A stretch of DNA of 64,000 bases from IMGVR_UViG_3300027782_000027:124001-188000, one strand, 5' to 3'. Positions 8,304 through 62,684 are shown, counted from the first letter of the stretch. Translations and numbers: made by a program. Notes: generated from the sequence alone by a model not told the origin.

Positions 8304-8307
8304 AAAA

Positions 8308-9861: not shown

Positions 9862-9867
9862 TTCATA

Positions 9868-9915: not shown

Positions 9916-9945
9916 AAACACAAACAAATTAAATCATAGACATTT

Positions 9946-10938: not shown

Positions 10939-10947
10939 TTTTAGTTC

Positions 10948-11952: not shown

Positions 11953-11960
11953 CATAAATT

Positions 11961-12413: not shown

Positions 12414-12438
12414 TATTTATTCTAAAAACAAACATAAT

Positions 12439-17297: not shown

Positions 17298-17756
17298 ATG
17301 GCTCAAGGTAAAACATACGGTATAACATTTCCATTTAGAGATTCTTTTGACGGTAAATATTTAGATTTAACTGACTTTGATGAAGATGAGGTTAAAACAG
17401 ATTTAGTTCATTTACTATTAACAAGAAAGGGAAGCAGATATTTTTTACCAAATTTTGGGACAAGATTATATGAATATATTTTTGAACCACTTGATGGTCC
17501 AACATTTAATGAGATTGAAACTGAAATAAAAGATTCTGTGACAGCGTATATTCCTAATCTTCAAATTACATCAGTTAAAGTTGAACCAATTATATCACCT
17601 GATGGACAATCGGATTTATCGACAACTTTTCCTGGAACAGGTGAAATAACTTTACCTGATTTAGCAATTAATGAACACACTGCAAAAGTGACAATAAATT
17701 ATAATATTACGAGTGGAGTATTTAATACTTCTGACTTTATAATTATTAATATATAA
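17298..17756 (+). CDS. T4 gp25-like baseplate wedge protein (GPW/gp25 family)
   Basis: GITFPF...LLLTRKGSRYFLPNFGTRLYEYIFEP is the gp25 signature. Confidence 0.92.
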   Translation: MAQGKTYGITFPFRDSFDGKYLDLTDFDEDEVKTDLVHLLLTRKGSRYFLPNFGTRLYEYIFEPLDGPTFNEIETEIKDSVTAYIPNLQITSVKVEPIISPDGQSDLSTTFPGTGEITLPDLAINEHTAKVTINYNITSGVFNTSDFIIINI

Positions 17757-17757
17757 C

Positions 17758-34970: not shown

Positions 34971-35975
34971 ATGAGTTTAGTAACAATTAGCAATTTATCG
35001 GGTATTCCTCCTTACCAAGTTTCTGTCTGTGATATCTTTCAGTTTTCTTGTGTTACGGTAACAACAATTTACGATTATATTCCTCCGGCATATTCTTTTT
35101 ATTTACCAAGTGGTTTTAATAATGCTCCGAAAGTATTAATTAAGATTGTCGATTCTACGGGGTGTATTTTTACAAGTGAGTATGAATGTTTAACACCAAC
35201 TCCAACACCGAGTATTACTCCGTCAATTACACCTACGATTTCACTTACACCTTCTAATACTCCGACACCAAGTATTACTCCATCAGTTACTCCAACATTA
35301 TCGATTACTCCGACAATTACTCCGACACCAAGTATTACTCCGTCGATTACACCTACTAATACTTTAACACCAACACCTACTGTGACACCTACTTTAACTC
35401 AAACTCCTGAAGTTGGAAGATATGCTTATTTATTTATTGAACCTTATTCTGGTTCGTCATCTATTGGAAGTTATATGAATTCTATAGGTTCATCATTCTA
35501 TGGATTTACAAATGCTACAAGACCAAGTACTTCGGCATCTACGTTCCAAACGGATATGCAAAACTATGTTAATTTCTCGGGATGGTCAACAGGTTTATTC
35601 CCACAAGTAATAAGACAAACGATACCTCAAACAACGGGAGGACTTGATAGTTATGGTAATCCAAGAATTGCATACAATTTCTTAACAACACTTGTTCCTG
35701 AAAATTATACCCAAAGTAAGGCTTGGTATACTTGGATAATACCAACTAATCTTACAAATAACAAATACCAAATGGAAATTGATTTGGGGATTGTTAATCC
35801 GAATGTGTTTACGAGTTATAAAATGGAACCAACCATTTATCAAAATACGTTTACATATGTTGGTCCAACCATTGCAAATACAACATATAGGGTTTATACA
35901 ACATACCCATCAACTTCGTTTGAGATAGATAATACTTACGACCTTTATTTTAGAGGAAGTAAGGTTGATATATAA
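34971..35975 (+). CDS. Two-domain protein with Pro/Thr/Ser mucin-like linker (putative fibre adaptor)
   Basis: The N-domain is shared with 62418..62684, the linker is (TPTPSITPS)n, and the C-domain is shared with 43547..44755. Confidence 0.7.
35193..35408 (+). repeat. Pro/Thr/Ser low-complexity coding repeat
   Basis: About 70 aa of [15 protein letters not shown]. The DNA unit ccgacaccaagtattactcc recurs. Confidence 0.9.
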
Positions 35976-35984
35976 TTATAGTAA

Positions 35985-36974
35985 ATGAGTTTCCCATATA
36001 AAAATCCAATATCGTCTATCCAACTAAATGGGACACAAAGTGTACCAAGAAACAATACGTATGGCACTACTTTCAGTGTTAACAATACGGGTGGTTACAT
36101 GGAGGTTTTTAGTTTATCTGACCTTTATTATACAATACCAACAGGAACAACGGGAAGTATTGAATATTCGGGTAATACCATTCCTATTGAGTTTACAAAG
36201 GGAACGGGTGCCGCTTGGTCTCCTGATGTAATTACATTAGCTTCAGATAATATTTCATCAGGTAGAAGACGACTTGGTATGTTGGCTTATGTTTATGAGG
36301 TTGACCAAGTTTATCAATATCATATTAATAATTACGAGACGTTATTTAATGCTGCTACGGCTAGTACAGGATGTGCTCAGGTATCTGATTTTGGAACAAC
36401 GATAAATAATAAAACTGCTGCGGGTCAGTCGTTTATTAATTCTTGGACTGCAAATACTATTGAAGATGTAAGTGGTACGACATATAGCACTGCGGTATGG
36501 AGAAAGTTTCCAGCACGTACTGTTAGAGCTTGGGGTTCATTTATTTCTACCGTTAGTCAATACGTAACAAGTACAACGACCGCATATTCAATGAGTGCCG
36601 CAACACAAACATCAGGAAATGGTGTTAGCGTTTCCGCAAATACAAGATTTATTGTTGCAAGTGCGGGGACATACAATTTACAATTTTCTTCTCAATTAGA
36701 GTCAACAGGTGGAGGCGCTGCTCAAACTATGAACATATGGTTGGCAATAAATGGTTTTAATGTTGATAATTCAAACACAGCTATTGTTGGAAATTCTAAT
36801 AATGGAAGAAGTGTTGCGGCATGGAATTTTGTAGAACCATTAAACGCTGGTGATTACATGGAATTAAAGTTTTGGGTTAGTGATATCAGATTAGGATTTG
36901 CATATGATGTAGCACAATCTACTCCGACCAGACCGGCAATTCCATCAGTAATAGTAACGGTAACACAAGTGTAA
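35985..36974 (+). CDS. Short fibre-like protein: N-terminal anchor domain plus C1q/BclA-CTD-like head
   Basis: The N-terminal ~175 aa are paralogous to the N-terminus of the 4766-aa protein. The C-terminus has VASAGTYNLQFSSQL...IWLAING...LNAGDYMEL, a C1q/TNF-like pattern. Confidence 0.65.
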   Translation: MSFPYKNPISSIQLNGTQSVPRNNTYGTTFSVNNTGGYMEVFSLSDLYYTIPTGTTGSIEYSGNTIPIEFTKGTGAAWSPDVITLASDNISSGRRRLGMLAYVYEVDQVYQYHINNYETLFNAATASTGCAQVSDFGTTINNKTAAGQSFINSWTANTIEDVSGTTYSTAVWRKFPARTVRAWGSFISTVSQYVTSTTTAYSMSAATQTSGNGVSVSANTRFIVASAGTYNLQFSSQLESTGGGAAQTMNIWLAINGFNVDNSNTAIVGNSNNGRSVAAWNFVEPLNAGDYMELKFWVSDIRLGFAYDVAQSTPTRPAIPSVIVTVTQV

Positions 36975-36994
36975 AGATATATTTATAATATAAC

Positions 36995-38041
36995 ATGGCA
37001 ACATCAAGACCCTTCGCATATAACACAGGTTCAACAATTACAGGAACAGAACAACTTGGAAGTATTGCTATTGGTACGCCAACAAGTGGTTTCACATCCA
37101 CAGGTTTAAGATGGTGGAGTGGACCTGACGAAGATTTAGGTTATGTTATTGCCCATACAGTACCTTCAGGAACACAACCAAATCCTGTAGGAGTTCCGGC
37201 TTACATCGGTTTTTGGAGAACACCAAGTAAGACAGATAATAACTTTATTAGTTTATCACAGTATGTTTCAAGTTTTACAGGGACAGCGCAAACATTTGCA
37301 AGTACTTCAGCGGCTAAAACATGGTTAAACTCAGCTGGATATTGGACATCTTACTCATCTTCTATCGTTACCTCAGGACTCATATTAAACTATGATATTA
37401 GTAATACATCAAGTTATCCTGGAACAGGAACCACAATTACGGATTTAACAGGTAGTAGTAATGCGACACTATACAACTCTCCGACATACACATCATCAGG
37501 TGGAGGTTATCTAACCTTCAATGGTAGTAATCAATATATAGGAACTAATACCGCATTAGGTTCAAAATTAAACCCGGCTAACTCATCTACCGTTATCTCA
37601 ATCTTTGTATGGGTTTATCCTATGGATAATGGTGTTATTGTACAGGAAATTGGACAAACAACACCAAATACAGGATGGCATGATTCACAGATAGAAATGG
37701 TTGGGGGAACACTTAGGTTTTCTGTATGGCAGAACCAACCTGGTTTTGCGTCAACTATATCTACACCTTTAAACAATTGGTATTATGTTGGATTTACATA
37801 TAACGGAACAAATTTAATTGGTTATGTTAATGGAGTTTCTGCAGTAACTAGTGGGACCATATCAAGAGCCACACCAGGCGCTAATTTATATTATGCGATT
37901 GCACATGATGACGCAACAAATTTAGGTGACGGAACTTTTTCTAATATGAGATTTGGTGGAATGCAAATTTATAACACAGCATTGTCTAATGAAAATGTAT
38001 TAACAAATTATAATGCTCAAAAATCAAGATTTGGATTATAA
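36995..38041 (+). CDS. Virion protein with C-terminal LamG/concanavalin A-like lectin domain
   Basis: GLILNYD...SYPGTG, FNGSNQY, SIFVWVY, NNWYYVGFTYNG...YVNG, IYNTALS...NYNAQKSRFGL. Confidence 0.85.
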   Translation: MATSRPFAYNTGSTITGTEQLGSIAIGTPTSGFTSTGLRWWSGPDEDLGYVIAHTVPSGTQPNPVGVPAYIGFWRTPSKTDNNFISLSQYVSSFTGTAQTFASTSAAKTWLNSAGYWTSYSSSIVTSGLILNYDISNTSSYPGTGTTITDLTGSSNATLYNSPTYTSSGGGYLTFNGSNQYIGTNTALGSKLNPANSSTVISIFVWVYPMDNGVIVQEIGQTTPNTGWHDSQIEMVGGTLRFSVWQNQPGFASTISTPLNNWYYVGFTYNGTNLIGYVNGVSAVTSGTISRATPGANLYYAIAHDDATNLGDGTFSNMRFGGMQIYNTALSNENVLTNYNAQKSRFGL

Positions 38042-38127
38042 AATACAAAACGTATTATTATTTAAACTTATTAATTTATTTCTTTAATTTTTATTTAAAA
38101 TTAATACTTTTTGTGTAAAACATTTAC

Positions 38128-39372
38128 ATGAAAATTTTTATACAAGTTGCTTCTTACAGAGACCCCCAACTAATCCCAACTATACAGTCAGCATTAGAAA
38201 ATGCTAAACGACCTGAAAACTTAGTTTTCGGTATTGCTCGTCAGTATCATCCTGATGATAGTTTTGATAATTTGGACGAATACCGAAACGATGAAAGGTT
38301 TAGAATAATTGATATTCCTTATACAGAATCCAAAGGAGCTTGTTGGGCAAGAAATAAGATACAACAAGTATATCAAAAGGAGTCATATACTCTTCAAATT
38401 GACTCACATATGAGGTTTGCTCAAAATTGGGATGACGAGATGATTAAGATGATTAAACAACTTCAAAAGAAAGGATATAAGAAACCATTATTAACAGGTT
38501 ATGTTTCATCCTTTGACCCTGACAATGACCCTAACCTACGTGTGAACGAACCTTGGAGAATGGCGTTTGATAGATTTATTCCTGAAGGTGCGGTTTTCTT
38601 TTTACCTGAGACAATTCCTGGTTGGCAAAATTTAACTGAACCTGTTACCGCAAGGTTCTACTCGGCTCACTTTTGTTTTACTCTTGGTAAATTTGCTAAA
38701 GAAGTTCAACACGACCCTGAGTTCTATTTTCATGGTGAAGAGATTTCAATTGCTGCAAGAGCTTACACTCATGGATATGATTTATTTCACCCACATAAAG
38801 TTTTGATTTGGCATGAATATACAAGAAAGGGAAGAACCAAACAATGGGATGACGATAAAGAATGGGTTGATAAGAATAATTTTGCTCACAAAAAAAATCG
38901 TTCTCTATTCGGTATGGATGATGAGGAAGATATGAAACACGGAAAGTATGGTTTTGGTAAAGTTAGAAGTTTAAGAGACTATGAAAAATATTCAGGACTT
39001 TTATTTTCAAAGAGAGCTGTTCAACAATACACATTAGATAAGGGTTATCCACCAAATCCAAATAACTTCAATTCAGAAGAAGAATGGTTAAAATCATTTA
39101 CATCAGTATTCAAACATTGTATTGATATTGGGTTTACTCAAGTACCTGAAAAAGATTATGACTTTTGGGTTGTTGCATTCCATAATGAATTAGATGAAAC
39201 CATTTACAGACAAGATGCTGATAAAGGTGAAGTTGATAGAATGTTAAGAGACCCTGATGGTTATTGTAAAGTTTGGAGAGAGTTCTTAACTGATTCAAAA
39301 CCTAAATATTGGGTGGTTTGGCCTCACTCGGAATCTAAAGGATGGTGTGATAGAATAACAGGAAATTTATAA
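38128..39372 (+). CDS. GT60-family (Pfam GlcNAc-type) polypeptide/hydroxyproline N-acetylglucosaminyltransferase-like protein
   Basis: IFIQVASYRDP, SKGACWAR, LQIDSHMRFAQNWD (DxH), FHGEEI..AARAYTHGYDLFHP and WHEY follow the motif series of Skp1/polypeptide GlcNAc-transferases. Confidence 0.82.
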   Translation: MKIFIQVASYRDPQLIPTIQSALENAKRPENLVFGIARQYHPDDSFDNLDEYRNDERFRIIDIPYTESKGACWARNKIQQVYQKESYTLQIDSHMRFAQNWDDEMIKMIKQLQKKGYKKPLLTGYVSSFDPDNDPNLRVNEPWRMAFDRFIPEGAVFFLPETIPGWQNLTEPVTARFYSAHFCFTLGKFAKEVQHDPEFYFHGEEISIAARAYTHGYDLFHPHKVLIWHEYTRKGRTKQWDDDKEWVDKNNFAHKKNRSLFGMDDEEDMKHGKYGFGKVRSLRDYEKYSGLLFSKRAVQQYTLDKGYPPNPNNFNSEEEWLKSFTSVFKHCIDIGFTQVPEKDYDFWVVAFHNELDETIYRQDADKGEVDRMLRDPDGYCKVWREFLTDSKPKYWVVWPHSESKGWCDRITGNL

Positions 39373-39375
39373 GAT

Positions 39376-40086
39376 ATGAAATTTACATTTACTACTTTTT
39401 GTTTTGGTGAAAGATATTATAACCAAGTTAATAGATTTATTGGTGATATCGTAGAATCAGATTATAAAACAAATTTGGTTGTCATTACCGATGACCCAAG
39501 TAAGATTAATAATCAAGAATTTGTTCACGCCTTCAACATTAATGATTTTAATCCAAATTATTTGGAGTATGCTAAAAACTACTATGACTTTGATTTTTCA
39601 GTTAAAAGATATTCGTTAAGAGCAGCTTTAAGTATTGGTTTTACTAAAATCATATTAGTTGATTGTGATATGAGAGTTAACCCATCTTTCTTTAATGAAG
39701 AAAAGATTTTGGGGGCGTTTGATGAGAATTGTTTATCAGGGCCAGTTACCTATAATTTTCACGAACAAGTTCATACTAATAGTGAATTAGGTAGACGATT
39801 ACTTGAGTATGAGAAATACTTTAATCATGAGGTTGATAAAGATAAGTTGGAGGTTATGCCTGAAGATTGTATTCAATACTTGAGTATTGATGAAGATAAG
39901 TTTAATGGTTTTTTAGATACTTGGGACAAGTGTATTGAATATAAAAAAGAAAAAGGTTTGAGAAACATACCCGCTGGTAACATAGATGAGATGTGTTTTT
40001 CAGCATTATTTAATGGAATTGAAATAAAAAATAACGCTTATAAAGCATCAAATATAATATACGCAGAACATGACAAATGGTACTAA
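39376..40086 (+). CDS. Putative GT-A-fold glycosyltransferase
   Basis: FTTFCFGERY, VVITDD, KRYSL and IILVDCD (DxD). It lies within the GT cluster. Confidence 0.6.
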   Translation: MKFTFTTFCFGERYYNQVNRFIGDIVESDYKTNLVVITDDPSKINNQEFVHAFNINDFNPNYLEYAKNYYDFDFSVKRYSLRAALSIGFTKIILVDCDMRVNPSFFNEEKILGAFDENCLSGPVTYNFHEQVHTNSELGRRLLEYEKYFNHEVDKDKLEVMPEDCIQYLSIDEDKFNGFLDTWDKCIEYKKEKGLRNIPAGNIDEMCFSALFNGIEIKNNAYKASNIIYAEHDKWY

Positions 40087-40924
40087 AATAATTTCGGCAA
40101 TTTATGAATTAAAATATGTTGAAGGGATTAATAGTGAGAGATATAAAAATTTTCCATTATTGGTCGCGACGATTAAAAATATAATTTATCCTGAATATCG
40201 TTACGTAATTTATACTGACCAAAATTCATATGATAAATTTAATTTAAAGTATGAATTTAATTTTCCAAATGTTGAATTCAAGTTTAAAGAATTAAATACA
40301 TCTGAAACTTGTGAATTAATTGATAGAATTAGAACTCAAGAATTATCAGGTGGAATTAACTATGATAGAATTTATTGTGTAAACAATTATTTGGAAGTTG
40401 TTTTAAATAAACTTAAATTCTTAATTGATGAGTCACATGATTGTGATAATATCTTTTGGATTGATGCCGGATTGATTGGAACATCTTGTCACGATGGGTG
40501 GAGAGATTACATGGCTCCGTTAATTAATTCAAAAAACTTTTTGGATAAGGTGGTTGATAAGATAAACCAACATGGGTTTATTCATTTAAAAGGTAATTCA
40601 ATTGTTATGAATTATGAAACAGTTGCTAAGTTTAATGACCTATTTGGTGTTGAATTAAAGGTTGTTCCTGGATGTCTATTTGGTGGAACATCAGAAAAAG
40701 TTAGACATATTTTAGACGAATATTTAGACATTTTTAATCAATACTTAACTACACATAACCAACTTATTAGTGAACAAGAGGTTCTTACTGCTATTACAGG
40801 TAAACATTCTGATAAATGTTATGCTTTTGAGTTTGGAGATTGGTTAGACTTACAAAGAGCATTTTTAGACATTTTAGACATTTATGATGAAACAAAATAT
40901 GTAAGGGAGAAATGTTATGTTTAG
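40070..40924 (+). CDS. HtrL/YibB (WlaTC)-like putative glycosyltransferase
   Basis: YVIYTD, KLKFL, FWIDAGL, GCLFGG, SEQEVL. Confidence 0.65.
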   Translation: MTNGTKIISAIYELKYVEGINSERYKNFPLLVATIKNIIYPEYRYVIYTDQNSYDKFNLKYEFNFPNVEFKFKELNTSETCELIDRIRTQELSGGINYDRIYCVNNYLEVVLNKLKFLIDESHDCDNIFWIDAGLIGTSCHDGWRDYMAPLINSKNFLDKVVDKINQHGFIHLKGNSIVMNYETVAKFNDLFGVELKVVPGCLFGGTSEKVRHILDEYLDIFNQYLTTHNQLISEQEVLTAITGKHSDKCYAFEFGDWLDLQRAFLDILDIYDETKYVREKCYV

Positions 40925-41480
40925 TCTTAATATTGTTTGTACTTCTATTGGAAGGGAAACCCTACCAAGATTGATTGAGTCATTCAAAGACCAATTAGAT
41001 ACAACTGATATTTTTACAATAATATCTGATATTAATCACGAATTTGTTTCAGAAGTATTATCAAGATATGAGTTTAAATTCAAAGTTAATCACATATTAA
41101 ATCAAGGCGAACAAAAGTGGAAATACGGACATCCATTAATTAATGAAAACATTAATTCATTAGAAGGTGATTTTATAATGTTTGCCGATGATGATGATAG
41201 ATACACTGAAGAAGCATTTAAAGTAATCAAAGAAACTATTAAAGATAAAAACAAATTATACATATTCAAACACAATTGGTTAGGTGATATTAATTGGAGA
41301 TTAAAAGATTTTACAAGAGGTAATGTAGGTAAATGTATGGGAGTGATTCCAAATACACATAATTTACCGATGTTCCAAGAAGATGTTTTTGGAGATGTTA
41401 TTTTTTATGAAGAGATAGGTAAAGTGTTTGAAAGTGAATTTGTTGATTACATAATCTATAAAGTTAGACATACGGAATGA
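40917..41480 (+). CDS. GT2-like glycosyltransferase
   Basis: TSIGRETLPRLIES, GDFIMFADDDDRY, GDVIF. Confidence 0.72.
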   Translation: MFSLNIVCTSIGRETLPRLIESFKDQLDTTDIFTIISDINHEFVSEVLSRYEFKFKVNHILNQGEQKWKYGHPLINENINSLEGDFIMFADDDDRYTEEAFKVIKETIKDKNKLYIFKHNWLGDINWRLKDFTRGNVGKCMGVIPNTHNLPMFQEDVFGDVIFYEEIGKVFESEFVDYIIYKVRHTE

Positions 41481-43147
41481 GTAATATTACATTAGTTACA
41501 GGATTGTGGAATATTGGAAGGGAAAATCTTGAAGAAGGTTGGTCTCGTTCTTTTTCACATTATTTAGAAAAATTTGAACAACTATTAAAAGTTGAAGAAA
41601 ACTTAATAATTTTTGGTGAAAAGGAATTGGAGGAATTTGTTTGGGAAAGAAGAGACCAAAGTAATACCCAATTTATTTTAAGAGATAAGAGTTGGTTTGT
41701 TGAAAATGACTTTTACAATAAAATACAAGAAATTAGAAATAATCCTGAATGGTATAATCAATCAGGGTGGTTAAAAGAATCAACACAAGGTAGATTGGAA
41801 ATATACAATCCACTTGTTATGTCAAAAATGTTTATATTAAATGATGCAAGGATTTTTGATAAGTTTAATTCAGAGTTTTTATTTTGGATTGACGCTGGAC
41901 TTACAAATACTGTTCATCCTGGATATTTTACACATGATAAGGTTTTAAATAATTTAAGTAAGTATATTGATAAGTTTACATTTGTTTGTTTTCCATACGA
42001 TGCAAGTAATGAGATACATGGATTTTCATACCCAAAGATTAATCAGTGGGCTGAAGATGATGTAAAGAAAGTTGCTCGTGGTGGGTTCTTTGGTGGGCCG
42101 AAAGAAACCATATCACAGATGAATGGTGAATACTATAACCTATTGAATGATACACTATCAAGTGGGTACATGGGAACGGAAGAGTCAATATTTTCAATAA
42201 TGGTTTATAAGTTAAGTGAATACATAAATTATTTTGAAATTGAATATAATGGTTTATTTGGGAAATTCTTTGAGGATTTAAAAGATGATGTTTTAGTTAA
42301 AAAGACAGAGTTTGTTAAAATTCAAAATGATTTAGATATAGATAAAGTTGCGTTGTATGTAATAACATTCAATTCACCAAAACAATTTGAAACATTAATT
42401 AAATCTATGATTGAATATGATAGGGATTTCTTGGACAAACCAAAGAAATTTTTATTGGATAACTCTACAGATTTATCAACAACTGAAGAATACTTAAGAC
42501 TTTGTAAAGAATATGACTTTGAACATATTAAAAAAGATAACATAGGCATTACAGGTGGAAGACAATGGACTGCTGAACACTTTGATGAAACAGGGTTGGA
42601 CTATATGTTATTCTTTGAAGATGATATGTTTTTTTATTCAAAAAAAAATGAAGTATGTAGAAATGGGTTCAACAGATATGTGAGTAATCTATATCAAAAA
42701 AGTTTAGAGATAGTTAACAAAGAAAACTTTGATTTTTTAAAATTAAATTTTTCAGAGTTTTATGGTGATAATAGTACTCAGTGGAGTTGGTATAATGTTC
42801 CACAAAATTTCAGAGAACAACATTGGCCAAAAAACCCAAGATTACCTCAACATGGTTTAGACCCGAACGCTCCAAAAACAAAATTTAACGAGATAAAAAC
42901 ACATAAGGGTTTACCATATGCTTCAGGTGAAATTTATTTGTGTAACTGGCCTATAATCCTTTCAAAAAGTGGGAGTTATAAATGTTATTTGGAGACAAAA
43001 TATCAACACCCATATGAGCAAACTTTAATGTCTCACAACTTCCAAAACACAATTAAAGGTAAGTTAAAACCAGGTATTTTATTACTCACTCCTACCGAAC
43101 ATGATAGATTTGAACATTATGATAGTAATTTAAGAAAAGAATGTTGA
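41477..43147 (+). CDS. Two-domain putative glycosyltransferase (HtrL/YibB-like plus GT-A domain)
   Basis: N-domain: TLVTGLWNIGR, SKMFIL, FWIDAGL, GGFFGG, TEESIF. C-domain: LYVITFN, LLDNS, NIGITGGR, YMLFFEDDM. Confidence 0.7.
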   Translation: MSNITLVTGLWNIGRENLEEGWSRSFSHYLEKFEQLLKVEENLIIFGEKELEEFVWERRDQSNTQFILRDKSWFVENDFYNKIQEIRNNPEWYNQSGWLKESTQGRLEIYNPLVMSKMFILNDARIFDKFNSEFLFWIDAGLTNTVHPGYFTHDKVLNNLSKYIDKFTFVCFPYDASNEIHGFSYPKINQWAEDDVKKVARGGFFGGPKETISQMNGEYYNLLNDTLSSGYMGTEESIFSIMVYKLSEYINYFEIEYNGLFGKFFEDLKDDVLVKKTEFVKIQNDLDIDKVALYVITFNSPKQFETLIKSMIEYDRDFLDKPKKFLLDNSTDLSTTEEYLRLCKEYDFEHIKKDNIGITGGRQWTAEHFDETGLDYMLFFEDDMFFYSKKNEVCRNGFNRYVSNLYQKSLEIVNKENFDFLKLNFSEFYGDNSTQWSWYNVPQNFREQHWPKNPRLPQHGLDPNAPKTKFNEIKTHKGLPYASGEIYLCNWPIILSKSGSYKCYLETKYQHPYEQTLMSHNFQNTIKGKLKPGILLLTPTEHDRFEHYDSNLRKEC

Positions 43148-43176
43148 TTTTTTGATATTTATTTAAAAAACTATTA

Positions 43177-43545
43177 ATGGAATTTTTTATTAACAAAGGT
43201 GCAACACTGCCTGTTCTTAAAATGCAAGTGGTTAAAGATGGTATTGCTGACATAACAGAGTTTATGTCACTGATAGAAACCTCGTTGATTTATTTTTCCA
43301 TGATAGATGTTAAAACGGGAGGTTACAAGATTCTGAATAAGAAAGGAGGGTTTGTTGAAAAGACATTTATTGACCCAAACGCTGAGACAGAATACTATGT
43401 TTATTATAAATTCACTTCAAGCGATACAAGTAGAGAGGGACTTTATGAAGGAGAGTTTGTTTTTATCACTGATACAGGAACTTATATTTTACCAATCAGA
43501 GAAAAACTTACGATAAAAATTGGTAATAGTTACGTATCTATTTAA
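43177..43545 (+). CDS. Small Ig-like (BppU N-terminal-like) virion protein
   Basis: FFINKGATLPVL...YYKFTSSDTSREGLYEGEF...ILP. Paralogous to the N-domain of the next gene. Confidence 0.6.
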   Translation: MEFFINKGATLPVLKMQVVKDGIADITEFMSLIETSLIYFSMIDVKTGGYKILNKKGGFVEKTFIDPNAETEYYVYYKFTSSDTSREGLYEGEFVFITDTGTYILPIREKLTIKIGNSYVSI

Positions 43546-43546
43546 T

Positions 43547-44755
43547 ATGGAATGGTTTATTAAGAAAAATTCAACGTTACCAGTTTTCCAAGTTGAGATA
43601 TCAAAAGACGGAAGAAGTGATTTTGGTTTAGATGAAAATATTTCGGGTAATACAATTTTAATTTCGGTATATGACGAAATTAATAAGAAATATGTTGTAG
43701 CGTCTAAAGAATGTTATATTACAACAAGTGCGTCTACTGTTAATCCTTTAGATATTACTTATTATGTAAACTATCAATTCACAAGTAGAGAAACAAAAAA
43801 TGAAGGTAAGTTTTTAGTTCAGTTTTTAAAACAATCATCTCAGGGTATTGTTATTATACCATTACCTCAAAAAATTTATGTAAGTGTTCTTAGTAGTTTT
43901 AGTTTAAACTCTTACTCTTATCCAACTAATAATCCTTACATTATTGATAGACCTTGTTGTAACGCACCTGCTCTACCTGCAACACCTACTCCGACTCCAA
44001 GTATTACTCCAAGTGTTACACCAACAATGTCTTTAACACCTACGAGAACCCCAACTCTCACCCCAACAACGACAACAACCCCAACATTTACTCCGACACC
44101 ATCTATAACAAAACCTTTGTACTACGCTTATGTATTCGCAGAACCACAAGATTCTTCGGCAAGTGGTTCGTTGTATGGATTAGGAAGTTATATGTATTAC
44201 TTGGCGGATGGTGTTACAGTTGATACTAATGTTAATTGGTACGGATGGGGTAATTCGGGAGCTCTTCCATTACCGACAAGTCCAAACTACAGTTATATGA
44301 TGAACAAATACTCATCATACTCAGGATTTACGGGTGGAACAGGAAACTTTGTTAAACCTACAGACTTAAAAGGTGTGTTAAACCAATTCTCAAATACTAT
44401 TAACGATAGTTTCGGATGTTTAATTAACCAATACACATTTGAGACAATTGAGGTTAATAATAGTGATATTAACACTAGCTTACAGTACATGTATACGATT
44501 TGGATACCACTTGCTGGTGTGGGGGGAAGTTTAAATAACATGACAGTAAATGTTGGTTATCAATCACAACCTTGTGACTTTGATATTTTAGCAACTCCTG
44601 ACCCTAAAATTTCGGTTGGGAATATTACAATAACTTCAGGTGGAGCGATACCTGCGGGGACTTATAGAGTATTATACTTGTCTAACGATGGATTGTTACC
44701 TCCAAAACTTCCTGATAAAAATAATTATTATTTCAAAGGGGTGTATAAAACCTAA
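43547..44755 (+). CDS. Adaptor-like protein: BppU-like domain, Pro/Thr linker, C-domain shared with 34971..35975
   Basis: The start is reassigned from 43520 to the ATG at 43547 because MEWFIKKNSTLPV aligns with MEFFINKGATLPV of the upstream paralog. Confidence 0.7.
   Translation: MEWFIKKNSTLPVFQVEISKDGRSDFGLDENISGNTILISVYDEINKKYVVASKECYITTSASTVNPLDITYYVNYQFTSRETKNEGKFLVQFLKQSSQGIVIIPLPQKIYVSVLSSFSLNSYSYPTNNPYIIDRPCCNAPALPATPTPTPSITPSVTPTMSLTPTRTPTLTPTTTTTPTFTPTPSITKPLYYAYVFAEPQDSSASGSLYGLGSYMYYLADGVTVDTNVNWYGWGNSGALPLPTSPNYSYMMNKYSSYSGFTGGTGNFVKPTDLKGVLNQFSNTINDSFGCLINQYTFETIEVNNSDINTSLQYMYTIWIPLAGVGGSLNNMTVNVGYQSQPCDFDILATPDPKISVGNITITSGGAIPAGTYRVLYLSNDGLLPPKLPDKNNYYFKGVYKT
43982..44110 (+). 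repeat. Pro/Thr/Ser low-complexity coding repeat
   Basis: [43 protein letters not shown]. Confidence 0.9.
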
Positions 44756-44784
44756 AAAAAAGATAATTATTAGTAAGTAAAAAA

Positions 44785-47700
44785 ATGGCAATACCGTATC
44801 AAAATCCAATAAGTGCGTCCCAAATTACAGGACCTTTCAGTGTAGCGAGAACAAGCCCATACGGAACCAATTTTAATGTTTTAAATGTTGGTGGATGGCA
44901 AGAGGCGGCATACCTTACTAATTTAGGTTTAATATTTAGTGGGCAAGGACAACAACAATTAAGTGTTAATAATATACCTATTAATATTAACATTGGTAAC
45001 GGTACATTTTCTCCAACATATTTAACTTTAAATTCTGACAATTTCTCTTCGGGTAGAAGAAGATTGGGTATGATTGTTTGGGTTAATGAAACTGAAACAG
45101 CATATCAATATCAAATAGACAATTACAATGATTTATGGGATGCGGCGGTAAGTGCTAATTCTGTAACTCAATTATCTTACGAAACTATTGTAAAGAACAA
45201 TACACCTGAAGGTCAGGCATTTATTAATGCTTGGACAGGTTCAACTATTGAAGGTGTTAGTGGCGTAACAAGAGCAAATGCTCGTTGGAGAGTTTTTGCA
45301 CAAGGTACTGAATTAACGGGTGGTACTTATTTTTCAGGTACAAGTACATTAGAATTATATAATAGTGATGGAACTGTTATTTCTGTAACAGGTATTACGG
45401 CATCTGGTTCTAATGGTAGTTCTGGAACATCAGGTTCAAGTGGTTCATCAGGTAGTTCAGGTTCAAGTGGGTCTTCGGGAACTTCAGGTAGTAATGGTTC
45501 GTCAGGTAGTAGTGGAACAAGCGGAACAAGTGGAACATCGGGTAGTACAGGAACTAGTGGTTCATCAGGAAGTGTAGGTACAAGTGGTAGTTCGGGATTA
45601 AGTGGTGTTGACGGTACAAATGGTACTAGTGGTTCATCTGGAAGTGTAGGTACATCAGGAACTTCAGGGTCATCAGGAAGTTCAGGTACAGGTGGAACAT
45701 CAGGAACTTCAGGTACATCAGGAAGTACTGGAACTTCAGGTTCAAGTGGTAGTGTTGGGACTAGTGGTACATCAGGTTCAAGTGGTTCTTCAGGAAGTGT
45801 TGGTACGTCTGGTTCATCTGGAAGTGCAGGTACATCAGGAACTTCAGGGTCATCAGGAAGTTCAGGTACAAGCGGAACATCAGGAACTGGAGGAACTTCA
45901 GGTTCAAGTGGTAGTGTTGGGACTAGTGGTACATCAGGAACAAGTGGTTCTTCAGGTACATCAGGTAGTTCAGGTTCAAGTGGTTCATCGGGAAGTTCAG
46001 GTTCAAGTGGTTCATCGGGTACATCAGGTAGTACTGGTACTAGTGGTAGTAGTGGAACAAGCGGAACGTCGGGTTCATCAGGTTCTGCGGGAAGTAGTGG
46101 TTCATCAGGTAGTGTTGGAACATCTGGTTCAAGTGGTAGTTCAGGTAGTTCTGGTTCATCAGGTACATCTGGCTCAAGTGGTAGCTCTGGTTCAACAGGT
46201 TCGTCAGGTAGTAGTGGTATAACTGGGTCTTCAGGTACGAGTGGTAGTTCTGGCACATCAGGTTCATCTGGTAGTTCAGGTTCTTCAGGTTCATCTGGTA
46301 GTTCAGGTTCTTCAGGTAGTACTGGTTCATCAGGAACTAGCGGAACATCAGGAACATCAGGTACAAGTGGTAGTTCAGGTTCTACAGGAACATCGGGTTC
46401 TACAGGAACATCGGGTTCTACAGGAACATCGGGTTCATCAGGTAGTAGTGGCTCAAGTGGAAGTTCAGGATTGACAGGTTCATCAGGAACATCGGGTTCA
46501 TCAGGGACATCGGGTTCATCAGGTAGTTCTGGTTCAAGTGGTAGTAGCGGAAGTACAGGGTCTTCGGGCACAAGTGGTAGTTCTGGTACATCAGGTTCAT
46601 CAGGAAGTTCAGGTTCATCAGGTTCTAGCGGTAGTGTTGGAACTTCGGGAACAAGTGGTTCAAGTGGAAGTTCAGGTTCTTCAGGAAGTGTAGGAACATC
46701 AGGTACAAGTGGTAGTTCAGGTTCGTCTGGCTCAAGTGGAAATACAGGTTCAAGTGGAACGAGTGGTTCATCAGGTACATCTGGCTCAAGTGGTAGTTCA
46801 GGTTCGTCTGGCTCAAGTGGTTCAAGTGGAAGTTCAGGTTCTTCAGGAAGTGTAGGAACATCAGGTACAAGTGGTAGTTCAGGTTCTTCAGGTAGTTCAG
46901 GTGTTAATGGTTCTTCAGGGACTAGTGGTAGTTCGGGAACATCTGGTTCTTCAGGAAGTTCGGGTTCATCAGGTTCTAGTGGTAGTTCAGGAACATCTGG
47001 CTCAAGCGGGTCTTCTGGTTCAAGTGGAAGTACTGGTTCTTCAGGAAGTGCAGGTACATCGGGTAGTGTAGGAACTAGCGGTAGTTCTGGTTCATCTGGT
47101 TCTTCAGGTAGTACTGGCTCAAGTGGTACTTCAGGTTCATCAGGTAGTGTAGGTACTAGTGGTTCATCAGGTAGTGTAGGTACTAGTGGTTCATCAGGTA
47201 GCACTGGTTCAAGTGGTAGTAGCGGAAGTACAGGGTCTTCTGGTACAAGTGGGAGCTCAGGAACATCTGGTACTAGCGGTAGTTCTGGGTCATCTGGTTC
47301 AGTTGGTACAAGCGGTTCATCAGGTAGTGTTGGAACATCTGGTTCATCAGGTTCTGTTGGTACTTCAGGAACATCGGGTTCATCAGGTAGTACTGGTTCA
47401 AGTGGAAGTTCAGGAAGTAGTGGTAGTGTAGGAACAAGTGGTTCTTCAGGGACATCTGGCTCAACAGGTACTTCAGGAACATCAGGTTCAAGTGGGTCTT
47501 CAGGTAGTTCGGGTTCATCAGGAAGTTCAGGTACAAGCGGAACATCAGGTTCAGTAGGAACAAGTGGTTCATCGGGAAGTTCAGGGTCAACAGGAACTTC
47601 AGGTTCAAGTGGGTCTTCAGGTAGTTCAGGAAGTAGCGGAACATCTGGTTCTAGTGGAAGTGTTGGAACTTCTGGCACATCAGGAACAAGTGGTTCATCG

Positions 47701-50700
47701 GGAAGTTCTGGTTCTGCCGGTACAAGTGGAAGTGTAGGAACAAGTGGTACTTCAGGTTCATCTGGCTCAAGTGGAAGTTCAGGTTCAACAGGTAGTTCAG
47801 GTACTAGCGGAACATCTGGAACAAGTGGTTCATCAGGTTCTAGCGGTAGCGCTGGAAGCTCAGGAACGTCAGGTTCTAGCGGTAGCACAGGTTCAAGTGG
47901 TTCTACTGGCACGTCAGGTTCTTCAGGAACAAGTGGTTCTGTAGGTACAAGCGGAACATCTGGTTCCTCAGGAAGTGTAGGTACTTCAGGTACTAGTGGA
48001 AGCTCAGGAAGTGTAGGAACATCTGGTTCAAGTGGTACTACTGGTACCTCAGGAACATCAGGTAGTTCAGGTTCATCTGGTAGTGTTGGTACATCAGGAA
48101 CTTCGGGTACTAGCGGAACATCAGGTTCTAGCGGTTCGTCAGGAAATAGTGGAAGTTCAGGTACAAGTGGAACATCGGGTTCAACTGGGTCTTCAGGCTC
48201 AAGTGGTAGTTCGGGAAGTGTTGGTACATCAGGAAGTAGTGGTTCTTCAGGTTCTAGTGGTAGTACTGGAAGCTCAGGAAGTACAGGTACATCGGGTTCA
48301 AGTGGAACTTCAGGTTCTTCAGGTACTAGCGGAACATCGGGAACTAGTGGAAGTTCAGGAAGTGTAGGTACTTCAGGTACATCAGGAAGTTCTGGTTCAG
48401 TAGGAACATCGGGTACTAGTGGTAGTTCTGGTTCAGTAGGAACATCGGGAACTAGTGGTAGTTCTGGTTCGTCTGGTTCAGTTGGTACTAGCGGTTCTTC
48501 AGGAAGTGTTGGAACTAGTGGAACATCAGGTAGTTCAGGTTCAAGTGGTTCTAGCGGAGTATCAGGTTCATCGGGTTCTAGTGGTATTAGTGGAAGTTCA
48601 GGTACTTCAGGTACTAGTGGAACTTCAGGTTCAAGTGGTTCTACTGGTACGTCAGGTTCTAGCGGAAGTGCTGGAAGCTCAGGAAATAGTGGGACATCAG
48701 GTTCTTCAGGTAGTGTTGGAACATCTGGTACTAGCGGTTCGTCAGGTAGTGTAGGGACTAGCGGAACATCTGGTTCAAGTGGTAGTTCAGGAAATAGTGG
48801 AACATCAGGAACTAGTGGCTCATCGGGTAGTGTAGGAACATCAGGAACAAGTGGTACGTCAGGTAGTTCTGGTTCAAGTGGTAGTTCAGGAAGTGTAGGT
48901 ACTTCAGGTACTAGTGGTAGTTCAGGAAGTGTAGGAACATCTGGTTCAAGTGGCTCTACTGGTACGTCAGGTTCTAGCGGAAGTGCTGGAAGCTCAGGAA
49001 ATAGTGGAACATCTGGAACAAGTGGCAGTTCAGGTTCTTCTGGTTCAAGTGGTAGTACTGGTACGTCAGGTAGTTCGGGAAGTACAGGAACATCTGGCTC
49101 TTCAGGAAGTGTTGGTACATCAGGAACTAGTGGAACTAGTGGAACTTCAGGTAGTTCTGGTTCAGTAGGAACTTCAGGTACTAGTGGTAGCGTAGGAACA
49201 TCGGGTACATCAGGTAGTTCTGGTTCATCGGGAAGCAGTGGTTCTTCAGGTTCTAGCGGTAGTGCTGGAAGTTCAGGAACTAGTGGGTCTACAGGTTCAA
49301 GTGGAAGTAGTGGTTCTTCAGGAAGTGTTGGAACAAGTGGTTCTAGCGGAAGTACTGGTACATCAGGTAGTTCAGGAAGTGTTGGTACAAGTGGTTCTTC
49401 AGGAAGTACTGGAACATCAGGAACAAGTGGTAGTTCAGGTTCTGTGGGTACATCAGGTACTAGCGGTACGAGCGGAAGTTCTGGTTCAAGTGGAACTTCT
49501 GGTTCTTCGGGAAGTACTGGTACATCTGGTTCATCGGGTAGTGTAGGTACTTCAGGAACAAGTGGTTCATCTGGAAGTACGGGTACATCAGGTAGTGCTG
49601 GTTCTTCTGGCTCAAGTGGTAGTTCAGGTTCTTCAGGAAGTTCTGGAAGCGTTGGTACATCTGGAACTAGTGGTTCTTCAGGAAGTACAGGCACAAGTGG
49701 TACATCAGGTAGTTCAGGGTCAAGTGGAACTGGAGGTTCGTCAGGTTCAAGTGGAAGCACCGGAACCTCAGGAACATCAGGAAGTGTTGGAACATCAGGA
49801 ACGTCTGGTTCTTCAGGAAGTGTTGGTACGAGTGGAACATCGGGTTCATCAGGTAGTGTTGGAACATCTGGTTCTTCAGGTTCATCAGGAACAAGTGGAA
49901 CATCAGGTAGTTCTGGCTCTGTAGGTACTAGTGGTACATCAGGGTCTTCAGGAAGTGTGGGAACAAGTGGGACTAGCGGTACATCAGGAACTTCTGGTTC
50001 ATCAGGAAGTGTGGGAACTAGCGGTAGTTCGGGTAGTGTAGGTACTTCAGGAACTAGCGGTACATCAGGTTCTAGTGGAAGCGTTGGTACATCAGGTACG
50101 AGCGGTTCTTCAGGAAGTTATGGTTCAAGTGGTAGTTCAGGAAGCACAGGTACAAGTGGAACATCTGGTTCTTCAGGTACGACAGGTAGTTCGGGGAGTA
50201 GTGGTAGTTCAGGTTCTTCGGGTAGTGTTGGTACTTCAGGAAGTAGTGGTTCAAGTGGAACATCAGGGTATAGCGGAAGTAGTGGTAGTTCTGGCTCATC
50301 AGGAAGTGCTGGTACTTCAGGGGTTAACGGAAGTTCTGGAACATCAGGAAGTAGTGGTTCATCTGGGTCTTCAGGTTCTAGCGGTTCATCAGGAACGTCT
50401 GGCTCAAGCGGAAGTACTGGTTCATCTGGTTCATCTGGTTCATCTGGAAGTACGGGAACATCAGGGTCTAGCGGTTCAACAGGTACAAGTGGTACATCGG
50501 GTAGTGTAGGTACATCAGGTTCATCGGGAAGTTCTGGCTCATCAGGTTCTAGTGGAAGTGTTGGTACTTCTGGAACAAGTGGTTCTTCGGGAAGTACTGG
50601 TTCATCAGGTAGTTCAGGAACATCAGGAAGTACAGGTACATCAGGAACAAGTGGTAGTTCAGGTTCTGTGGGTACATCAGGTACCAGCGGTACGAGTGGA

Positions 50701-60629: not shown

Positions 60630-60641
60630 TAAGTATAAAAT

Positions 60642-61520: not shown

Positions 61521-61529
61521 TATAATAAT

Positions 61530-62417: not shown

Positions 62418-62684
62418 ATGACATACGTTGAAATATCAAATATAAACGGAACACCACCTTTTCAAATTTACTTATGTGATTTTGCGGGTAATAATTGTTC
62501 TTTGGTTCAAACTGAATACGACCCCGTTTATTGGCCAGTTATTGTTTATCTTCCATCGTCTTTGATTGGGTCAAGTCAGGTGATGTGTAAAGTTATTGAT
62601 GGAAATTCTTGTGAGACTTTTAATATTTTAGTTTGTCCAAGTCCTACACCAACACCGACACCTACCCCAACACCCACTCCTTAA
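62418..62684 (+). CDS. Small protein: N-domain paralogous to 34971..35975 plus terminal (TP)n tail
   Basis: ISNINGTPPFQIYLCD...KVIDGNSC aligns with [16 protein letters not shown]...KIVDSTGC. It ends CPSPTPTPTPTPTPTP. Confidence 0.7.
   Translation: MTYVEISNINGTPPFQIYLCDFAGNNCSLVQTEYDPVYWPVIVYLPSSLIGSSQVMCKVIDGNSCETFNILVCPSPTPTPTPTPTPTP

What the first reader, a model, noticed from the sequence alone, without database searches (positions are those of the whole stretch)
34971..45400. Duplicated adaptor + fibre gene pair brackets the glycosyltransferase cassette
34971..35975 and 43547..44755 share a Pro/Thr linker and a C-domain ([45 protein letters not shown]) but have different N-domains. The gene after each (35985 and 44785) starts with the same domain (PYKNPIS/PYQNPIS, SDNISSGRRRLGM/SDNFSSGRRRLGM, GQSFINSWT/GQAFINAWT). 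Even the spacers are similar (ATAATTATAGTAA vs ATAATTATTAGTAA). Inference: this is a modular socket-and-plug pair that attaches a short C1q-like-headed fibre at one virion site and the giant GS fibre at another.
Basis: partly seen in the sequence, partly recalled or inferred. Interest (0 to 1): 0.65.

Follow-up and report, generated by a model that had tools for sequence, protein, structure and literature searches.

The report
Conserved adaptor–fibre connector gene pair, duplicated
An uncultured freshwater jumbo phage carries two copies of a two-gene unit: a tether protein ending in a conserved ~185-residue domain, followed by a fibre starting with a conserved ~177-residue domain. This gene order is kept in every related phage examined and even forms chains, which suggests a reusable joint for building tail fibres from separate proteins.

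Summary
The two fibres, F1 (35985-36974) and F2 (44785-59085), share an N-domain at 42% identity (E 1e-38). The two adaptors, A1 (34971-35975) and A2 (43547-44755), share a Pro/Thr linker and a C-domain. Plain BLAST barely detects the C-domain match (E 0.067), but profiles prove it (hhalign 97.8%, E 9e-13, 177 columns).

In all 105 related viral loci, the fibre gene is directly preceded by a gene with variable N-domain, Pro/Thr linker and C-domain. All 8 phage-type loci found through the C-domain have the fibre N-domain gene downstream.

One contig carries a daisy chain. Three successive genes each start with the fibre N-domain and end with the adaptor C-domain. The chain ends in a Peptidase_S74 fibre.

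The window's genome has exactly 2 + 2 copies. Complex prediction gave weak support only (0.60 against 0.00 for controls).

F1's head has a TNF/C1q fold (Z about 10). The C-domain model is confident but matches no known fold.

One caveat: about 8% of C-domain clusters are signal-peptide or lipoprotein proteins without a fibre partner. Two of these sit among housekeeping genes in an Aquirufa genome.

Best reading: a new, non-homologous plug-and-socket connector for tail fibres. Binding and the virion docking sites are still inferred.

The parts
34971..35183 (+). Adaptor A1, N-domain (aa 1-71), the 'GxPPY...CD' type
   Evidence: A paralogue, the ORF at 62418-62684, is 37% identical (E 3e-14). The same N-domain type is found joined to an A2-type C-domain in L098.
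35184..35408 (+). Adaptor A1, Pro/Thr linker (about 75 aa)
   Evidence: Linker length ranges from about 50 to 700 aa among relatives.
35424..35972 (+). Adaptor A1, conserved C-domain (183 aa). It starts AYLFIEP and ends YFRG plus 5 aa. Proposed socket.
   Evidence: Alignment A1. AF2 model pLDDT 96.5, pTM 0.91. No fold match in the PDB (best Z 4.5), BFVD or the Atlas.
35972..35984 (+). A1-to-F1 spacer with the motif ATAATTATAGTAA, which overlaps the A1 stop codon
35985..36515 (+). Fibre F1, conserved N-domain (aa 1-177, with the SDNISSGRRRLGM motif). Proposed plug.
   Evidence: Alignment A2 has 65% mean column identity. In the model the core (aa 40-177) has pLDDT 78-95, while the conserved first 37 aa fall below 50.
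36516..36971 (+). Fibre F1, TNF/C1q-like jelly-roll head (aa 178-329)
   Evidence: VIA Z 10.0-10.7 with rmsd about 3 Å over 120-132 residues to 4-1BBL, LIGHT, C1q, BclA, ExsFA and cyanophage fibres. Foldseek E 1e-5. Model pLDDT is only 60-80 here.
43177..43545 (+). Stand-alone paralogue of the A2 N-domain (122 aa), directly upstream of A2
   Evidence: 30% identity over 120 aa, E 4e-15.
43547..43966 (+). Adaptor A2, N-domain (about 140 aa), unrelated to A1's N-domain
43967..44119 (+). Adaptor A2, Pro/Thr linker (about 50 aa)
44126..44752 (+). Adaptor A2, conserved C-domain (209 aa). It starts AYVFAEP and ends YFKG plus 4 aa.
44763..44776 (+). A2-to-F2 spacer motif ATAATTATTAGTAA
44785..45315 (+). 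Fibre F2, conserved N-domain (aa 1-177)
45316..59085 (+). Fibre F2, giant Gly-X-Y (Ser/Thr-rich, proline-free) collagen-like shaft with short interruptions
   Evidence: The Pfam Collagen family matches the last 600 aa at E 8e-62. Gly sits at every third residue, in phase, from about aa 300 to 3600 and again from 3900 to 4200.
38128..43147 (+). Glycosyltransferase cassette lying between the two pairs (context only)
   Evidence: PF11397 GlcNAc transferase E 1e-68. Weak GT2 hit and HtrL_YibB hit.
62418..62684 (+). Short ORF made of an A1-type N-domain plus 15 aa of Pro/Thr linker, with no C-domain

Best explanation
The window lies in the baseplate and tail-fibre region of an uncultured, low-GC (about 30%) jumbo myovirus. 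It carries two paralogous copies of a two-gene connector unit.

Gene 1, the adaptor, has three parts: a variable N-domain, a flexible Pro/Thr tether of variable length, and a conserved C-terminal domain of about 185-210 aa. Gene 2, the fibre, starts with a conserved N-domain of about 177 aa and continues into a variable distal part. In F1 that distal part is a TNF/C1q-like head. In F2 it is a collagen-like shaft of about 4,500 aa.

I propose that the adaptor C-domain is a socket that holds the fibre N-domain, the plug. The adaptor N-domain would then fix the assembly to the virion, and the fibre would project distally.

What is shown:
- homology of both domain pairs;
- the strict adaptor-then-fibre gene order;
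- equal copy numbers of the two domains;
- chains of genes that each start with the plug and end with the socket;
- independent shuffling of the adaptor N-domains and linkers.

What is inferred:
- physical binding;
- polarity, with the adaptor proximal. This is suggested by chains that end in a Peptidase_S74 fibre;
- that the two N-domain types dock at two different virion sites;
- that the intervening glycosyltransferases modify the Thr/Ser-rich linkers or shaft.
For: 1. Homology. The fibre N-domains match at E 1e-38. The adaptor C-domains match at hhalign 97.8%, E 9e-13 over the full domain.

2. Adjacency. In all 105 viral loci holding the fibre N-domain (47 distinct upstream proteins; fibre N-domain identity down to about 49%), the gene immediately upstream has the N-domain, Pro/Thr linker and C-domain layout. 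It lies on the same strand with a gap of -1 to 53 nt. All 8 phage-type loci reached through the C-domain have the fibre N-domain gene next downstream: L120, L126, L127, L128, L140, L141, L142 and L143.

3. Daisy chain. L128 shows four successive C-domain-to-fibre-N-domain junctions at gene borders. Three of its genes each start with the fibre N-domain and end with the C-domain. The last gene ends in Peptidase_S74. The chain was seen in at least two assemblies.

4. Copy parity. The window's genome has exactly 2 C-domains and 2 fibre N-domains.

5. Position. The C-domain sits within 5 aa of the C-terminus in 139 of 167 domain rows. The fibre N-domain always begins at residues 1-9.

6. Modularity. 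At least five N-domain types and 50-700 aa linkers are combined with the same C-domain. L098 joins an A1-type N-domain to an A2-type C-domain and an F2-type fibre.

7. Congruent divergence. C-domain and fibre N-domain distances correlate at r = 0.79 (0 of 2000 permutations reach this). Swapping the window's partners lowers r to 0.62.

8. Complex prediction of the A1 C-domain with the F1 N-domain. The verdict was weak support: score 0.60 (runs 0.00, 0.62, 0.60), best of 3 controls 0.00. The pass mark was reached by 58 of 80 solved complexes and 2 of 110 mismatched pairs. At 0.60 or under, only 7 of those 80 passed, as did both mismatches that passed. The runs agree in at least 0% of contacts, and the partner's pLDDT is at least 50.

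9. Context. Baseplate wedge genes (gp25-like and gp6-like) lie upstream at 17298-19593.
Against: - No measurement of binding exists.
- The complex verdict is only 'weak'. One of three runs scored 0.00, and no interface was reported.
- The C-domain also occurs without any fibre partner, in proteins with signal peptides or lipoboxes and no Pro/Thr linker. These make up 12 of 150 representative clusters and were seen at loci L136, L138/L139 and L144. Two copies lie among housekeeping genes of an Aquirufa MAG. The fold therefore has some other function, or an additional one.
- In L128, the true order of the four partners ranks only 10th of 24 permutations. There is no partner-specific covariation there.
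- The overall distance correlation could largely reflect shared genome ancestry.
- L140 has the C-domain in an internal position, and L142 has two C-domain genes for one fibre gene.
- No fused C-domain-then-fibre-N-domain protein (Rosetta stone) was found among the 150 representatives.
Confidence: 0.6

Rival explanations
1. The two proteins are independent appendages. The fibre N-domain anchors directly to the baseplate. The 'adaptor' is a separate tethered adhesin whose C-domain binds a host-surface ligand. The gene adjacency is inherited synteny only.
For: Homologues of the C-domain are cellular surface lipoproteins without any fibre partner. The C-domain is a beta-sandwich with weak likeness to carbohydrate-binding accessory domains of glycosidases (Z about 4). 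There is no partner-specific covariation in L128. The complex verdict is only weak.
Against: The order held in 113 of 113 phage loci, across fibre N-domain identities down to about 45-50% and despite heavy shuffling of everything else. The order was also kept in both duplicated copies 8.8 kb apart. Copy numbers match at 2:2. Chains of genes that start with the fibre N-domain and end with the C-domain are hard to explain as independent fibres. The C-domain is conserved (43% mean column identity), which is not the hypervariability expected of a receptor-binding tip.
Confidence: 0.2
2. The C-domain protein is an assembly factor or chaperone. It would nucleate trimerisation of the downstream fibre through the fibre's N-domain and would not be retained as a structural joint.
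For: Tight translational coupling: overlapping stop and start codons or 1-12 nt spacers in many loci. The conserved first 37 aa of the fibre are unstructured in the monomer model.
Against: Known fibre chaperones are small proteins. They do not carry 50-700 aa tethers plus shuffled N-domains (my own knowledge of T4 gp38, gp57A and Tfa proteins). The chain genes that carry both domains argue for structural joints.
Confidence: 0.1
3. The adaptor similarity is only compositional (the Pro/Thr linker) plus chance motifs, so only the fibre gene was duplicated.
For: Plain BLASTP of A1 against A2 gives E 0.067. A search of the window's genome with the A2 C-domain as a single sequence did not find A1.
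Against: Profile-to-profile comparison without the linker gives 97.8% probability, E 9e-13, over 177 columns. Intermediate sequences link the two types in one alignment. A profile search of the genome finds both copies at E 3e-78 and 4e-64.
Confidence: 0.01

Closest known systems
T4-type long tail fibre built from consecutive gene products (gp34-gp35-gp36-gp37)
   Same: Adjacent genes, in proximal-to-distal order, would encode segments joined end to end. The L128 chain looks like this. The window lies next to T4-like baseplate wedge genes.
   Different: There is no sequence relation: no Pfam or PHROG hit for either domain. Here a single homologous socket-and-plug pair is reused at every joint and in both copies, whereas each T4 joint is unique (my own knowledge). 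The adaptor shaft is a disordered Pro/Thr tether, not a folded fibre.
Branched tailspike/fibre adaptors of phages G7C, CBA120 and SP6/K1-5 (N-terminal anchor domains docking on T4 gp10-like branching domains)
   Same: The principle is the same: receptor-binding proteins dock on one another through conserved N-terminal modules while their distal parts vary.
   Different: No gp10-like or other known docking domain was detected. The socket fold has no PDB match.
Bacillus exosporium nap: the collagen-like glycoprotein BclA with a C1q-like head, anchored through its N-terminus to ExsFA/BxpB
   Same: F1's head matches the BclA and ExsFA/BxpB folds (Z 9.6-10.2). F2 is a collagen-like Gly-X-Thr/Ser filament. 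Glycosyltransferase genes lie adjacent. Anchoring is through the N-terminus.
   Different: This is a phage, not a spore. The proposed anchor (the C-domain) is not TNF-like. There is no sequence homology.
PRD1 vertex spike P5 (N-terminal anchor, short collagen-like shaft, TNF-like head)
   Same: The fibre layout is the same, and the head fold matches (Z 8.4-8.7).
   Different: P5 docks on the penton, not on a separate tether protein (my own knowledge). There is no sequence relation.
Cohesin-dockerin pairs of cellulosomes
   Same: Both are plug-and-socket modules separated by Pro/Thr linkers, duplicated into types and combined freely with other domains.
   Different: There is no homology. The biological setting is different. 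The likeness is in mode of working only.

Membership tests
Collagen triple-helix repeat proteins (Pfam PF01391), for fibre F2 | Uninterrupted Gly-X-Y repeats that match the Pfam model above its cut-off | tested here: met
   E 7.9e-62, 205 bits against a cut-off of 27.2, on the last 600 aa. Gly sits at every third residue, in phase, over thousands of residues.
C1q/TNF-like jelly-roll head domains, for fibre F1 aa 178-329 | Ten-strand jelly-roll fold superposable on C1q/TNF/BclA heads | tested here: met
   VIA Z 10.0-10.7, rmsd 2.8-3.3 Å, 120-132 aligned residues, with 43 chains at Z of 8 or more, nearly all from the TNF/C1q family. Foldseek probability 1.00. Model pLDDT is only 60-80.
C1q/TNF-like jelly-roll head domains, for fibre F1 aa 178-329 | Sequence membership (Pfam C1q/TNF models, or a PDB sequence match) | tested here: not met
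   No Pfam family at E up to 0.01. No PDB sequence hit at E up to 1.
C1q/TNF-like jelly-roll head domains, for fibre F1 aa 178-329 | Trimeric assembly | not tested
   Only a monomer was modelled.
T4 long-tail-fibre proteins gp34-gp37 | Sequence homology to gp34, gp35, gp36 or gp37 | tested here: not met
   No PHROG or Pfam tail-fibre family matches A1, A2, F1 or the F2 N-domain.
T4 long-tail-fibre proteins gp34-gp37 | Consecutive genes that encode serially joined fibre segments | tested here: inconclusive
   The gene order fits. Joining of the products has not been measured, and the complex prediction is weak.
Branched tailspike adaptors with T4 gp10-like domains | Presence of gp10-like branching domains | tested here: not met
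   No such Pfam or PHROG hit. The C-domain fold search lists no gp10-like chain.
Cohesin-dockerin | Cohesin or dockerin domains | tested here: not met
   No Pfam hit. There is no cohesin among the fold matches.
New family pair proposed here (adaptor C-domain and fibre N-domain) | A C-domain at the end of one gene, followed directly by a gene that begins with the fibre N-domain | tested here: met
   Both window pairs meet this. So do 105 of 105 and 8 of 8 related phage loci.
New family pair proposed here (adaptor C-domain and fibre N-domain) | Direct binding of the two domains | tested here: inconclusive
   The complex prediction verdict was 'weak support': 0.60 against 0.00 for the best control. 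One of three runs scored 0.00, and the runs agree in at least 0% of contacts.

The most novel reading that the evidence does not exclude
A large clade of uncultured freshwater phages, probably infecting Bacteroidota, would use one reusable and previously undescribed protein connector. Its socket has a fold with no known match, and its plug is about 177 aa. With it they would assemble tail fibres from separate gene products like building bricks: single joints, two adaptors per fibre, and serial chains of three or more segments. The fibres would hang on Pro/Thr tethers of adjustable length and would include a collagen-like filament that may exceed a micrometre. The socket domain is shared with host-lineage cell-surface lipoproteins, which points to exchange between host and phage.
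Probability: 0.45. Interest if true: 0.7.

Novelty: new variant of a known kind. Interest (0 to 1): 0.55.

Why it matters
Tail-fibre architecture decides phage host range, and modular docking systems are the handles used to re-target phages in the laboratory. If the binding is real, this domain pair would be a compact connector: a socket of about 185 aa and a plug of about 177 aa, type-diversified and naturally able to form chains.

Three things set it apart. It is unrelated to the known T4, G7C and CBA120 docking modules. It sits in a group of abundant uncultured freshwater phages that have no cultured relative in the INPHARED collection. The socket has a confident predicted structure without a known fold match.

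It would also give a concrete way to annotate hundreds of 'hypothetical' virion genes; 243 clusters at 50% identity carry the socket. Finally, the cellular homologues offer a host lead (Aquirufa), and the neighbouring glycosyltransferases suggest a possible link between fibre glycosylation and mucin-like Pro/Thr tethers.

Tried and rejected
- Plain BLASTP of A1 against A2, and a single-sequence search of the window's genome with the A2 C-domain, could not show homology. Profiles replaced them.
- Pfam and PHROGs gave nothing useful for either domain. The only hits were weak ones caused by the Pro/Thr linker or with E above 1e-3.
- The INPHARED phage collection gave no DNA match and no tblastn match.
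- PDB sequence searches with both profiles and with the F1 head gave nothing significant.
- Fold searches with the C-domain model found no real match. Foldseek against the PDB gave none. VIA-wide gave a best Z of 4.5, a generic beta-sandwich. The Atlas gave TM below 0.5. BFVD found only an 80%-identical uncharacterised orthologue.
Single sequences were used instead.
- The fold of the fibre N-domain could not be searched on its own.
- The partner-specific covariation test on the four L128 joints gave no signal; the true order ranked 10th of 24.
- The complex prediction verdict was 'weak support'. The score was 0.60, and the best of 3 controls was 0.00. The pass mark was reached by 58 of 80 solved complexes and 2 of 110 mismatched pairs. 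At 0.60 or under, only 7 of those 80 passed, as did both mismatches that passed. The runs agree in at least 0% of contacts, and the partner's pLDDT is at least 50. Cognate versus non-cognate pairs could not be compared because only one complex job is allowed.
- Literature searches found no description of this family.
- I considered and rejected the idea that the long antisense ORFs inside F2 (for example 45327-49760 on the minus strand) are genes. They are by-products of the Gly-Ser-Thr codon repeat.


Full report
**Setting.** The window is bases 124001-188000 of a 240,759-bp IMG/VR virus record. The record is linear and estimated 82% complete. Its GC content is about 30%, rising to 48% inside the Gly-Ser-Thr repeat. 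Genes upstream of the finding encode replication and nucleotide-metabolism functions: SSB, a UvsX-like recombinase, a DnaB-like helicase and ribonucleotide reductase. After these come baseplate wedge proteins, gp25-like at 17298-17756 and gp6-like at 17758-19593. The finding therefore lies in the tail and baseplate region of a jumbo myovirus-like phage. No cultured phage in the INPHARED collection matches it, at either the DNA or the protein level.

**Checking the observation.**
- The fibre N-domains of F1 (35985-36974) and F2 (44785-59085) are clearly homologous, at 42% identity over 191 residues, E 1e-38.
- The adaptors A1 (34971-35975) and A2 (43547-44755) both carry a Pro/Thr linker.
- Their C-domains score only E 0.067 in plain BLASTP. 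I therefore collected relatives and compared profiles. With the linker removed, an HMM of 26 A1-type C-domains finds the window's A2 C-domain at E 4e-16. The hhalign comparison of the two profiles gives 97.8% probability, E 8.9e-13, over 177 columns, which is the full domain. Intermediate sequences join the two types in one alignment.
- The adaptor N-domains are unrelated to each other.
- The genome holds exactly two C-domains and two fibre N-domains.
- The spacer strings exist, and ATAATTAT(T)AGTAA occurs nowhere else in the window. That count is circular, because the pattern was read from these two sites. Variants with a TAATTATA core recur in the equivalent spacer of several lineages. I cannot say whether this reflects common descent or a signal.

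**Comparative genomics.** Searching IMG/VR with the two fibre N-domains gave 105 loci.
- In every locus, the gene immediately upstream lies on the same strand with a gap of -1 to 53 nt. It ends with the C-domain, closing on Y-[FY]-[KR]-G plus 4-5 residues.
- The 47 distinct upstream proteins share one layout: N-domain, then a Pro/Thr linker of 50-700 aa, then the C-domain starting directly after the linker with A-[YL]-[LV]-[FV]-x-E-P.
- The N-domains fall into at least five unrelated types. Closely related C-domains carry different N-domains. L098 has an A1-type N-domain on an A2-type C-domain in front of an F2-type fibre, while its near relatives L097, L099 and L101 have another N-domain type.
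- The fibres range from 281 to 4766 aa, and their distal parts differ.
- The only constant elements are therefore the end of gene 1 and the start of gene 2.

**Going the other way.** A profile of the C-domain was run against 1.84 billion representative proteins. It found 243 clusters at E up to 1e-3. The domain lies within 5 residues of the C-terminus in 139 of 167 domain rows. Eight phage-type loci were reached through the C-domain: L120, L126, L127, L128, L140, L141, L142 and L143. All have a fibre N-domain gene next downstream. There are variations. L142 has two C-domain genes in a row before one fibre gene. In L140 the C-domain is internal and is followed by a Cys-rich segment and a second linker.

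**The daisy chain.** The most telling locus is L128. One gene ends in the C-domain. Three further genes follow, of 605, 1153 and 925 aa, and each starts with the fibre N-domain and ends with the C-domain. A final gene of 1483 aa starts with the fibre N-domain and ends in a Peptidase_S74 domain, which is typical of the distal ends of tail fibres and spikes. That makes four socket-to-plug junctions, each falling exactly on a gene border. The arrangement was seen in at least two assemblies. It also suggests polarity, with the chain running from virion-proximal to distal.

**Structures.**
- The C-domain model is very confident: pLDDT 96.5 and pTM 0.91. It is a beta-sandwich with a helical insertion, and its first and last strands are the conserved ones. 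It has no convincing match in the PDB (Foldseek none; VIA-wide best Z 4.5), in the ESM Atlas (TM below 0.5) or in BFVD. The only BFVD hit is an 80%-identical uncharacterised orthologue from an uncultured phage.
- The F1 model is mixed (mean pLDDT 65). The N-domain core, residues 40-177, is good (78-95). The first 37 residues are conserved in sequence but unstructured in the monomer model.
- F1 residues 178-329 form a TNF/C1q jelly roll. Z is 10.0-10.7 to 4-1BBL, LIGHT, C1q, BclA, ExsFA and cyanophage fibre tips, and 43 chains reach Z of 8 or more. Foldseek probability is 1.00. In longer fibres of relatives this same domain is internal.
- F2 matches the Pfam Collagen family. It keeps Gly at every third residue, in phase, for thousands of residues, and it contains no proline.

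**Interaction test.** The score was 0.60 (runs 0.00, 0.62, 0.60) and the best of 3 controls was 0.00. The pass mark was reached by 58 of 80 solved complexes and 2 of 110 mismatched pairs. At 0.60 or under, only 7 of those 80 passed, as did both mismatches that passed. The runs agree in at least 0% of contacts, the partner's pLDDT is at least 50, and no interface was reported. By the tool's own wording, such a pass counts only if the guess was likely beforehand. The universal adjacency gives that prior, but this remains a prediction.

**Co-variation.** The distances among C-domains and among fibre N-domains correlate at r = 0.79, and 0 of 2000 permutations reach that value. Swapping the window's two partners lowers r to 0.62. 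This fits duplication of the pair as a unit. It could also reflect shared ancestry. Within L128 the true pairing ranks only 10th of 24 permutations, so there is no partner-specific signal there.

**Evidence against an exclusive socket role.**
- Twelve of the 150 listed representatives have an N-terminal signal peptide, several with a lipobox, and no Pro/Thr linker.
- Their loci show no fibre N-domain: L136, L138/L139 and L144.
- Two copies lie in a MAG of Aquirufa sp., a freshwater member of the Bacteroidota. Their neighbours are Nramp, LpxD, an HD-domain protein and oxidoreductase genes, so the setting is ordinary and cellular.
- The fold therefore also works on a bacterial surface without the plug. 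The phage use may be an exaptation, or the domain may bind something else as well. This keeps alive the rival in which adaptor and fibre are independent appendages. That rival, however, explains poorly the 113 of 113 adjacency, the 2:2 copy parity and the chains.

**Other related details.** Both adaptor N-domains have paralogues in the window.
- ORF 43177-43545, directly upstream of A2, is 30% identical to A2's N-domain (E 4e-15).
- ORF 62418-62684 is 37% identical to A1's N-domain (E 3e-14). It ends after 15 residues of Pro/Thr linker.
- A1-type N-domains share the G-x-P-P-Y motif with the SprB-repeat protein encoded just upstream at 32784-34946. In L142 the homologous SprB-repeat protein carries its own C-domain.

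These facts fit N-domains that dock on virion components or pair with them, but they do not prove it.

**Verdict.** The duplication is real and is more than chance. The adaptor-then-fibre unit is a conserved, modular and previously unannotated two-gene connector in a large group of uncultured freshwater phages. The plug-and-socket mechanism is the best-supported reading (confidence about 0.6). It rests on gene order, copy parity, the chains and a weak predicted interaction. Docking of the two adaptors at two different virion sites, and any role for the bracketed glycosyltransferases in modifying the linkers or the shaft, remain inferences. In kind, this is a new variant of the known theme of multi-protein, adaptor-mediated tail fibres, built from non-homologous parts.

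Noticed in passing
window 44785-59085: F2 is a 4766-aa protein. Gly sits at every third residue, in perfect phase, from about aa 300 to 3600 and again from 3900 to 4200. The X and Y positions are almost all Ser or Thr, and there is no proline. Non-repeat insertions lie near aa 3600-3900 and 4510-4625. If it forms a collagen-type triple helix at about 0.29 nm per residue (my own arithmetic), the shaft would be over 1 micrometre long.
   Followed up: partly
window 38128-43147: The cassette between the two pairs encodes a PF11397 GlcNAc-transferase family protein (E 1e-68), a weak GT2 hit and an HtrL_YibB-like protein. The Thr-rich Pro/Thr linkers and the Ser/Thr-rich shaft are obvious candidate O-glycosylation substrates. 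This was not tested.
   Followed up: no
window 43177-43545 and 62418-62684; also G000:194216-194413 (minus strand), outside the window: Paralogues of the adaptor N-domains. One is stand-alone and lies directly upstream of A2. Another is an A1-type N-domain that stops after 15 aa of Pro/Thr linker, so it may be a truncated third adaptor or a small docking protein.
   Followed up: partly
L128 (ENA ERZ28593570, scaffold_1288) 1-13238: A daisy chain of five genes with four C-domain-to-fibre-N-domain junctions, ending in a Peptidase_S74 fibre. In this assembly the 1153-aa middle gene is split into two ORFs, but it is intact in a second assembly.
   Followed up: yes
L145 and L146 (Aquirufa sp. MAG, NZ_JBIIQN010000028 and NZ_JBIIQN010000015): Cellular lipoproteins made of a signal peptide, a lipobox and the adaptor C-domain, lying among housekeeping genes. 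This is a possible hint to the host lineage of these phages and to the origin of the domain.
   Followed up: partly
L144 (JGI 3300071567, 281,639-bp contig): A lipoprotein-type C-domain protein lies on a 282-kb, 35% GC contig rich in HNH endonuclease genes, with ClpP and a carbamoyltransferase. This may itself be a jumbo phage, so some lipoprotein forms could be phage-encoded.
   Followed up: no
L140 3712-5136 and L142 3001-6805: Two variants of the architecture. In L140 the C-domain is internal and is followed by a Cys-rich segment and a second Pro/Thr linker before the fibre gene. In L142 two C-domain genes, one fused to SprB repeats, precede a single fibre gene.
   Followed up: partly
window 59733-62408: Three tandem paralogous genes of 292-298 aa. 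They are glycine-rich but not in Gly-X-Y register, and all end in G-[ML]-V-I-I-[TQ]-C-W. The first has a weak hit to PHROG 'tail fiber assembly' (E 6e-10).
   Followed up: no
window 45327-49760 and 50118-54161, minus strand: Very long antisense ORFs (1477 and 1347 aa) lie inside F2. They are by-products of the Gly-Ser-Thr codon repeat and are not genes.
   Followed up: partly
window 36995-38041: The gene directly after F1 encodes a 348-aa protein with a concanavalin A-like lectin/glucanase domain (Laminin_G_3, E 7.5e-9). It also matches the C-terminus of a PHROG virion structural protein.
   Followed up: no
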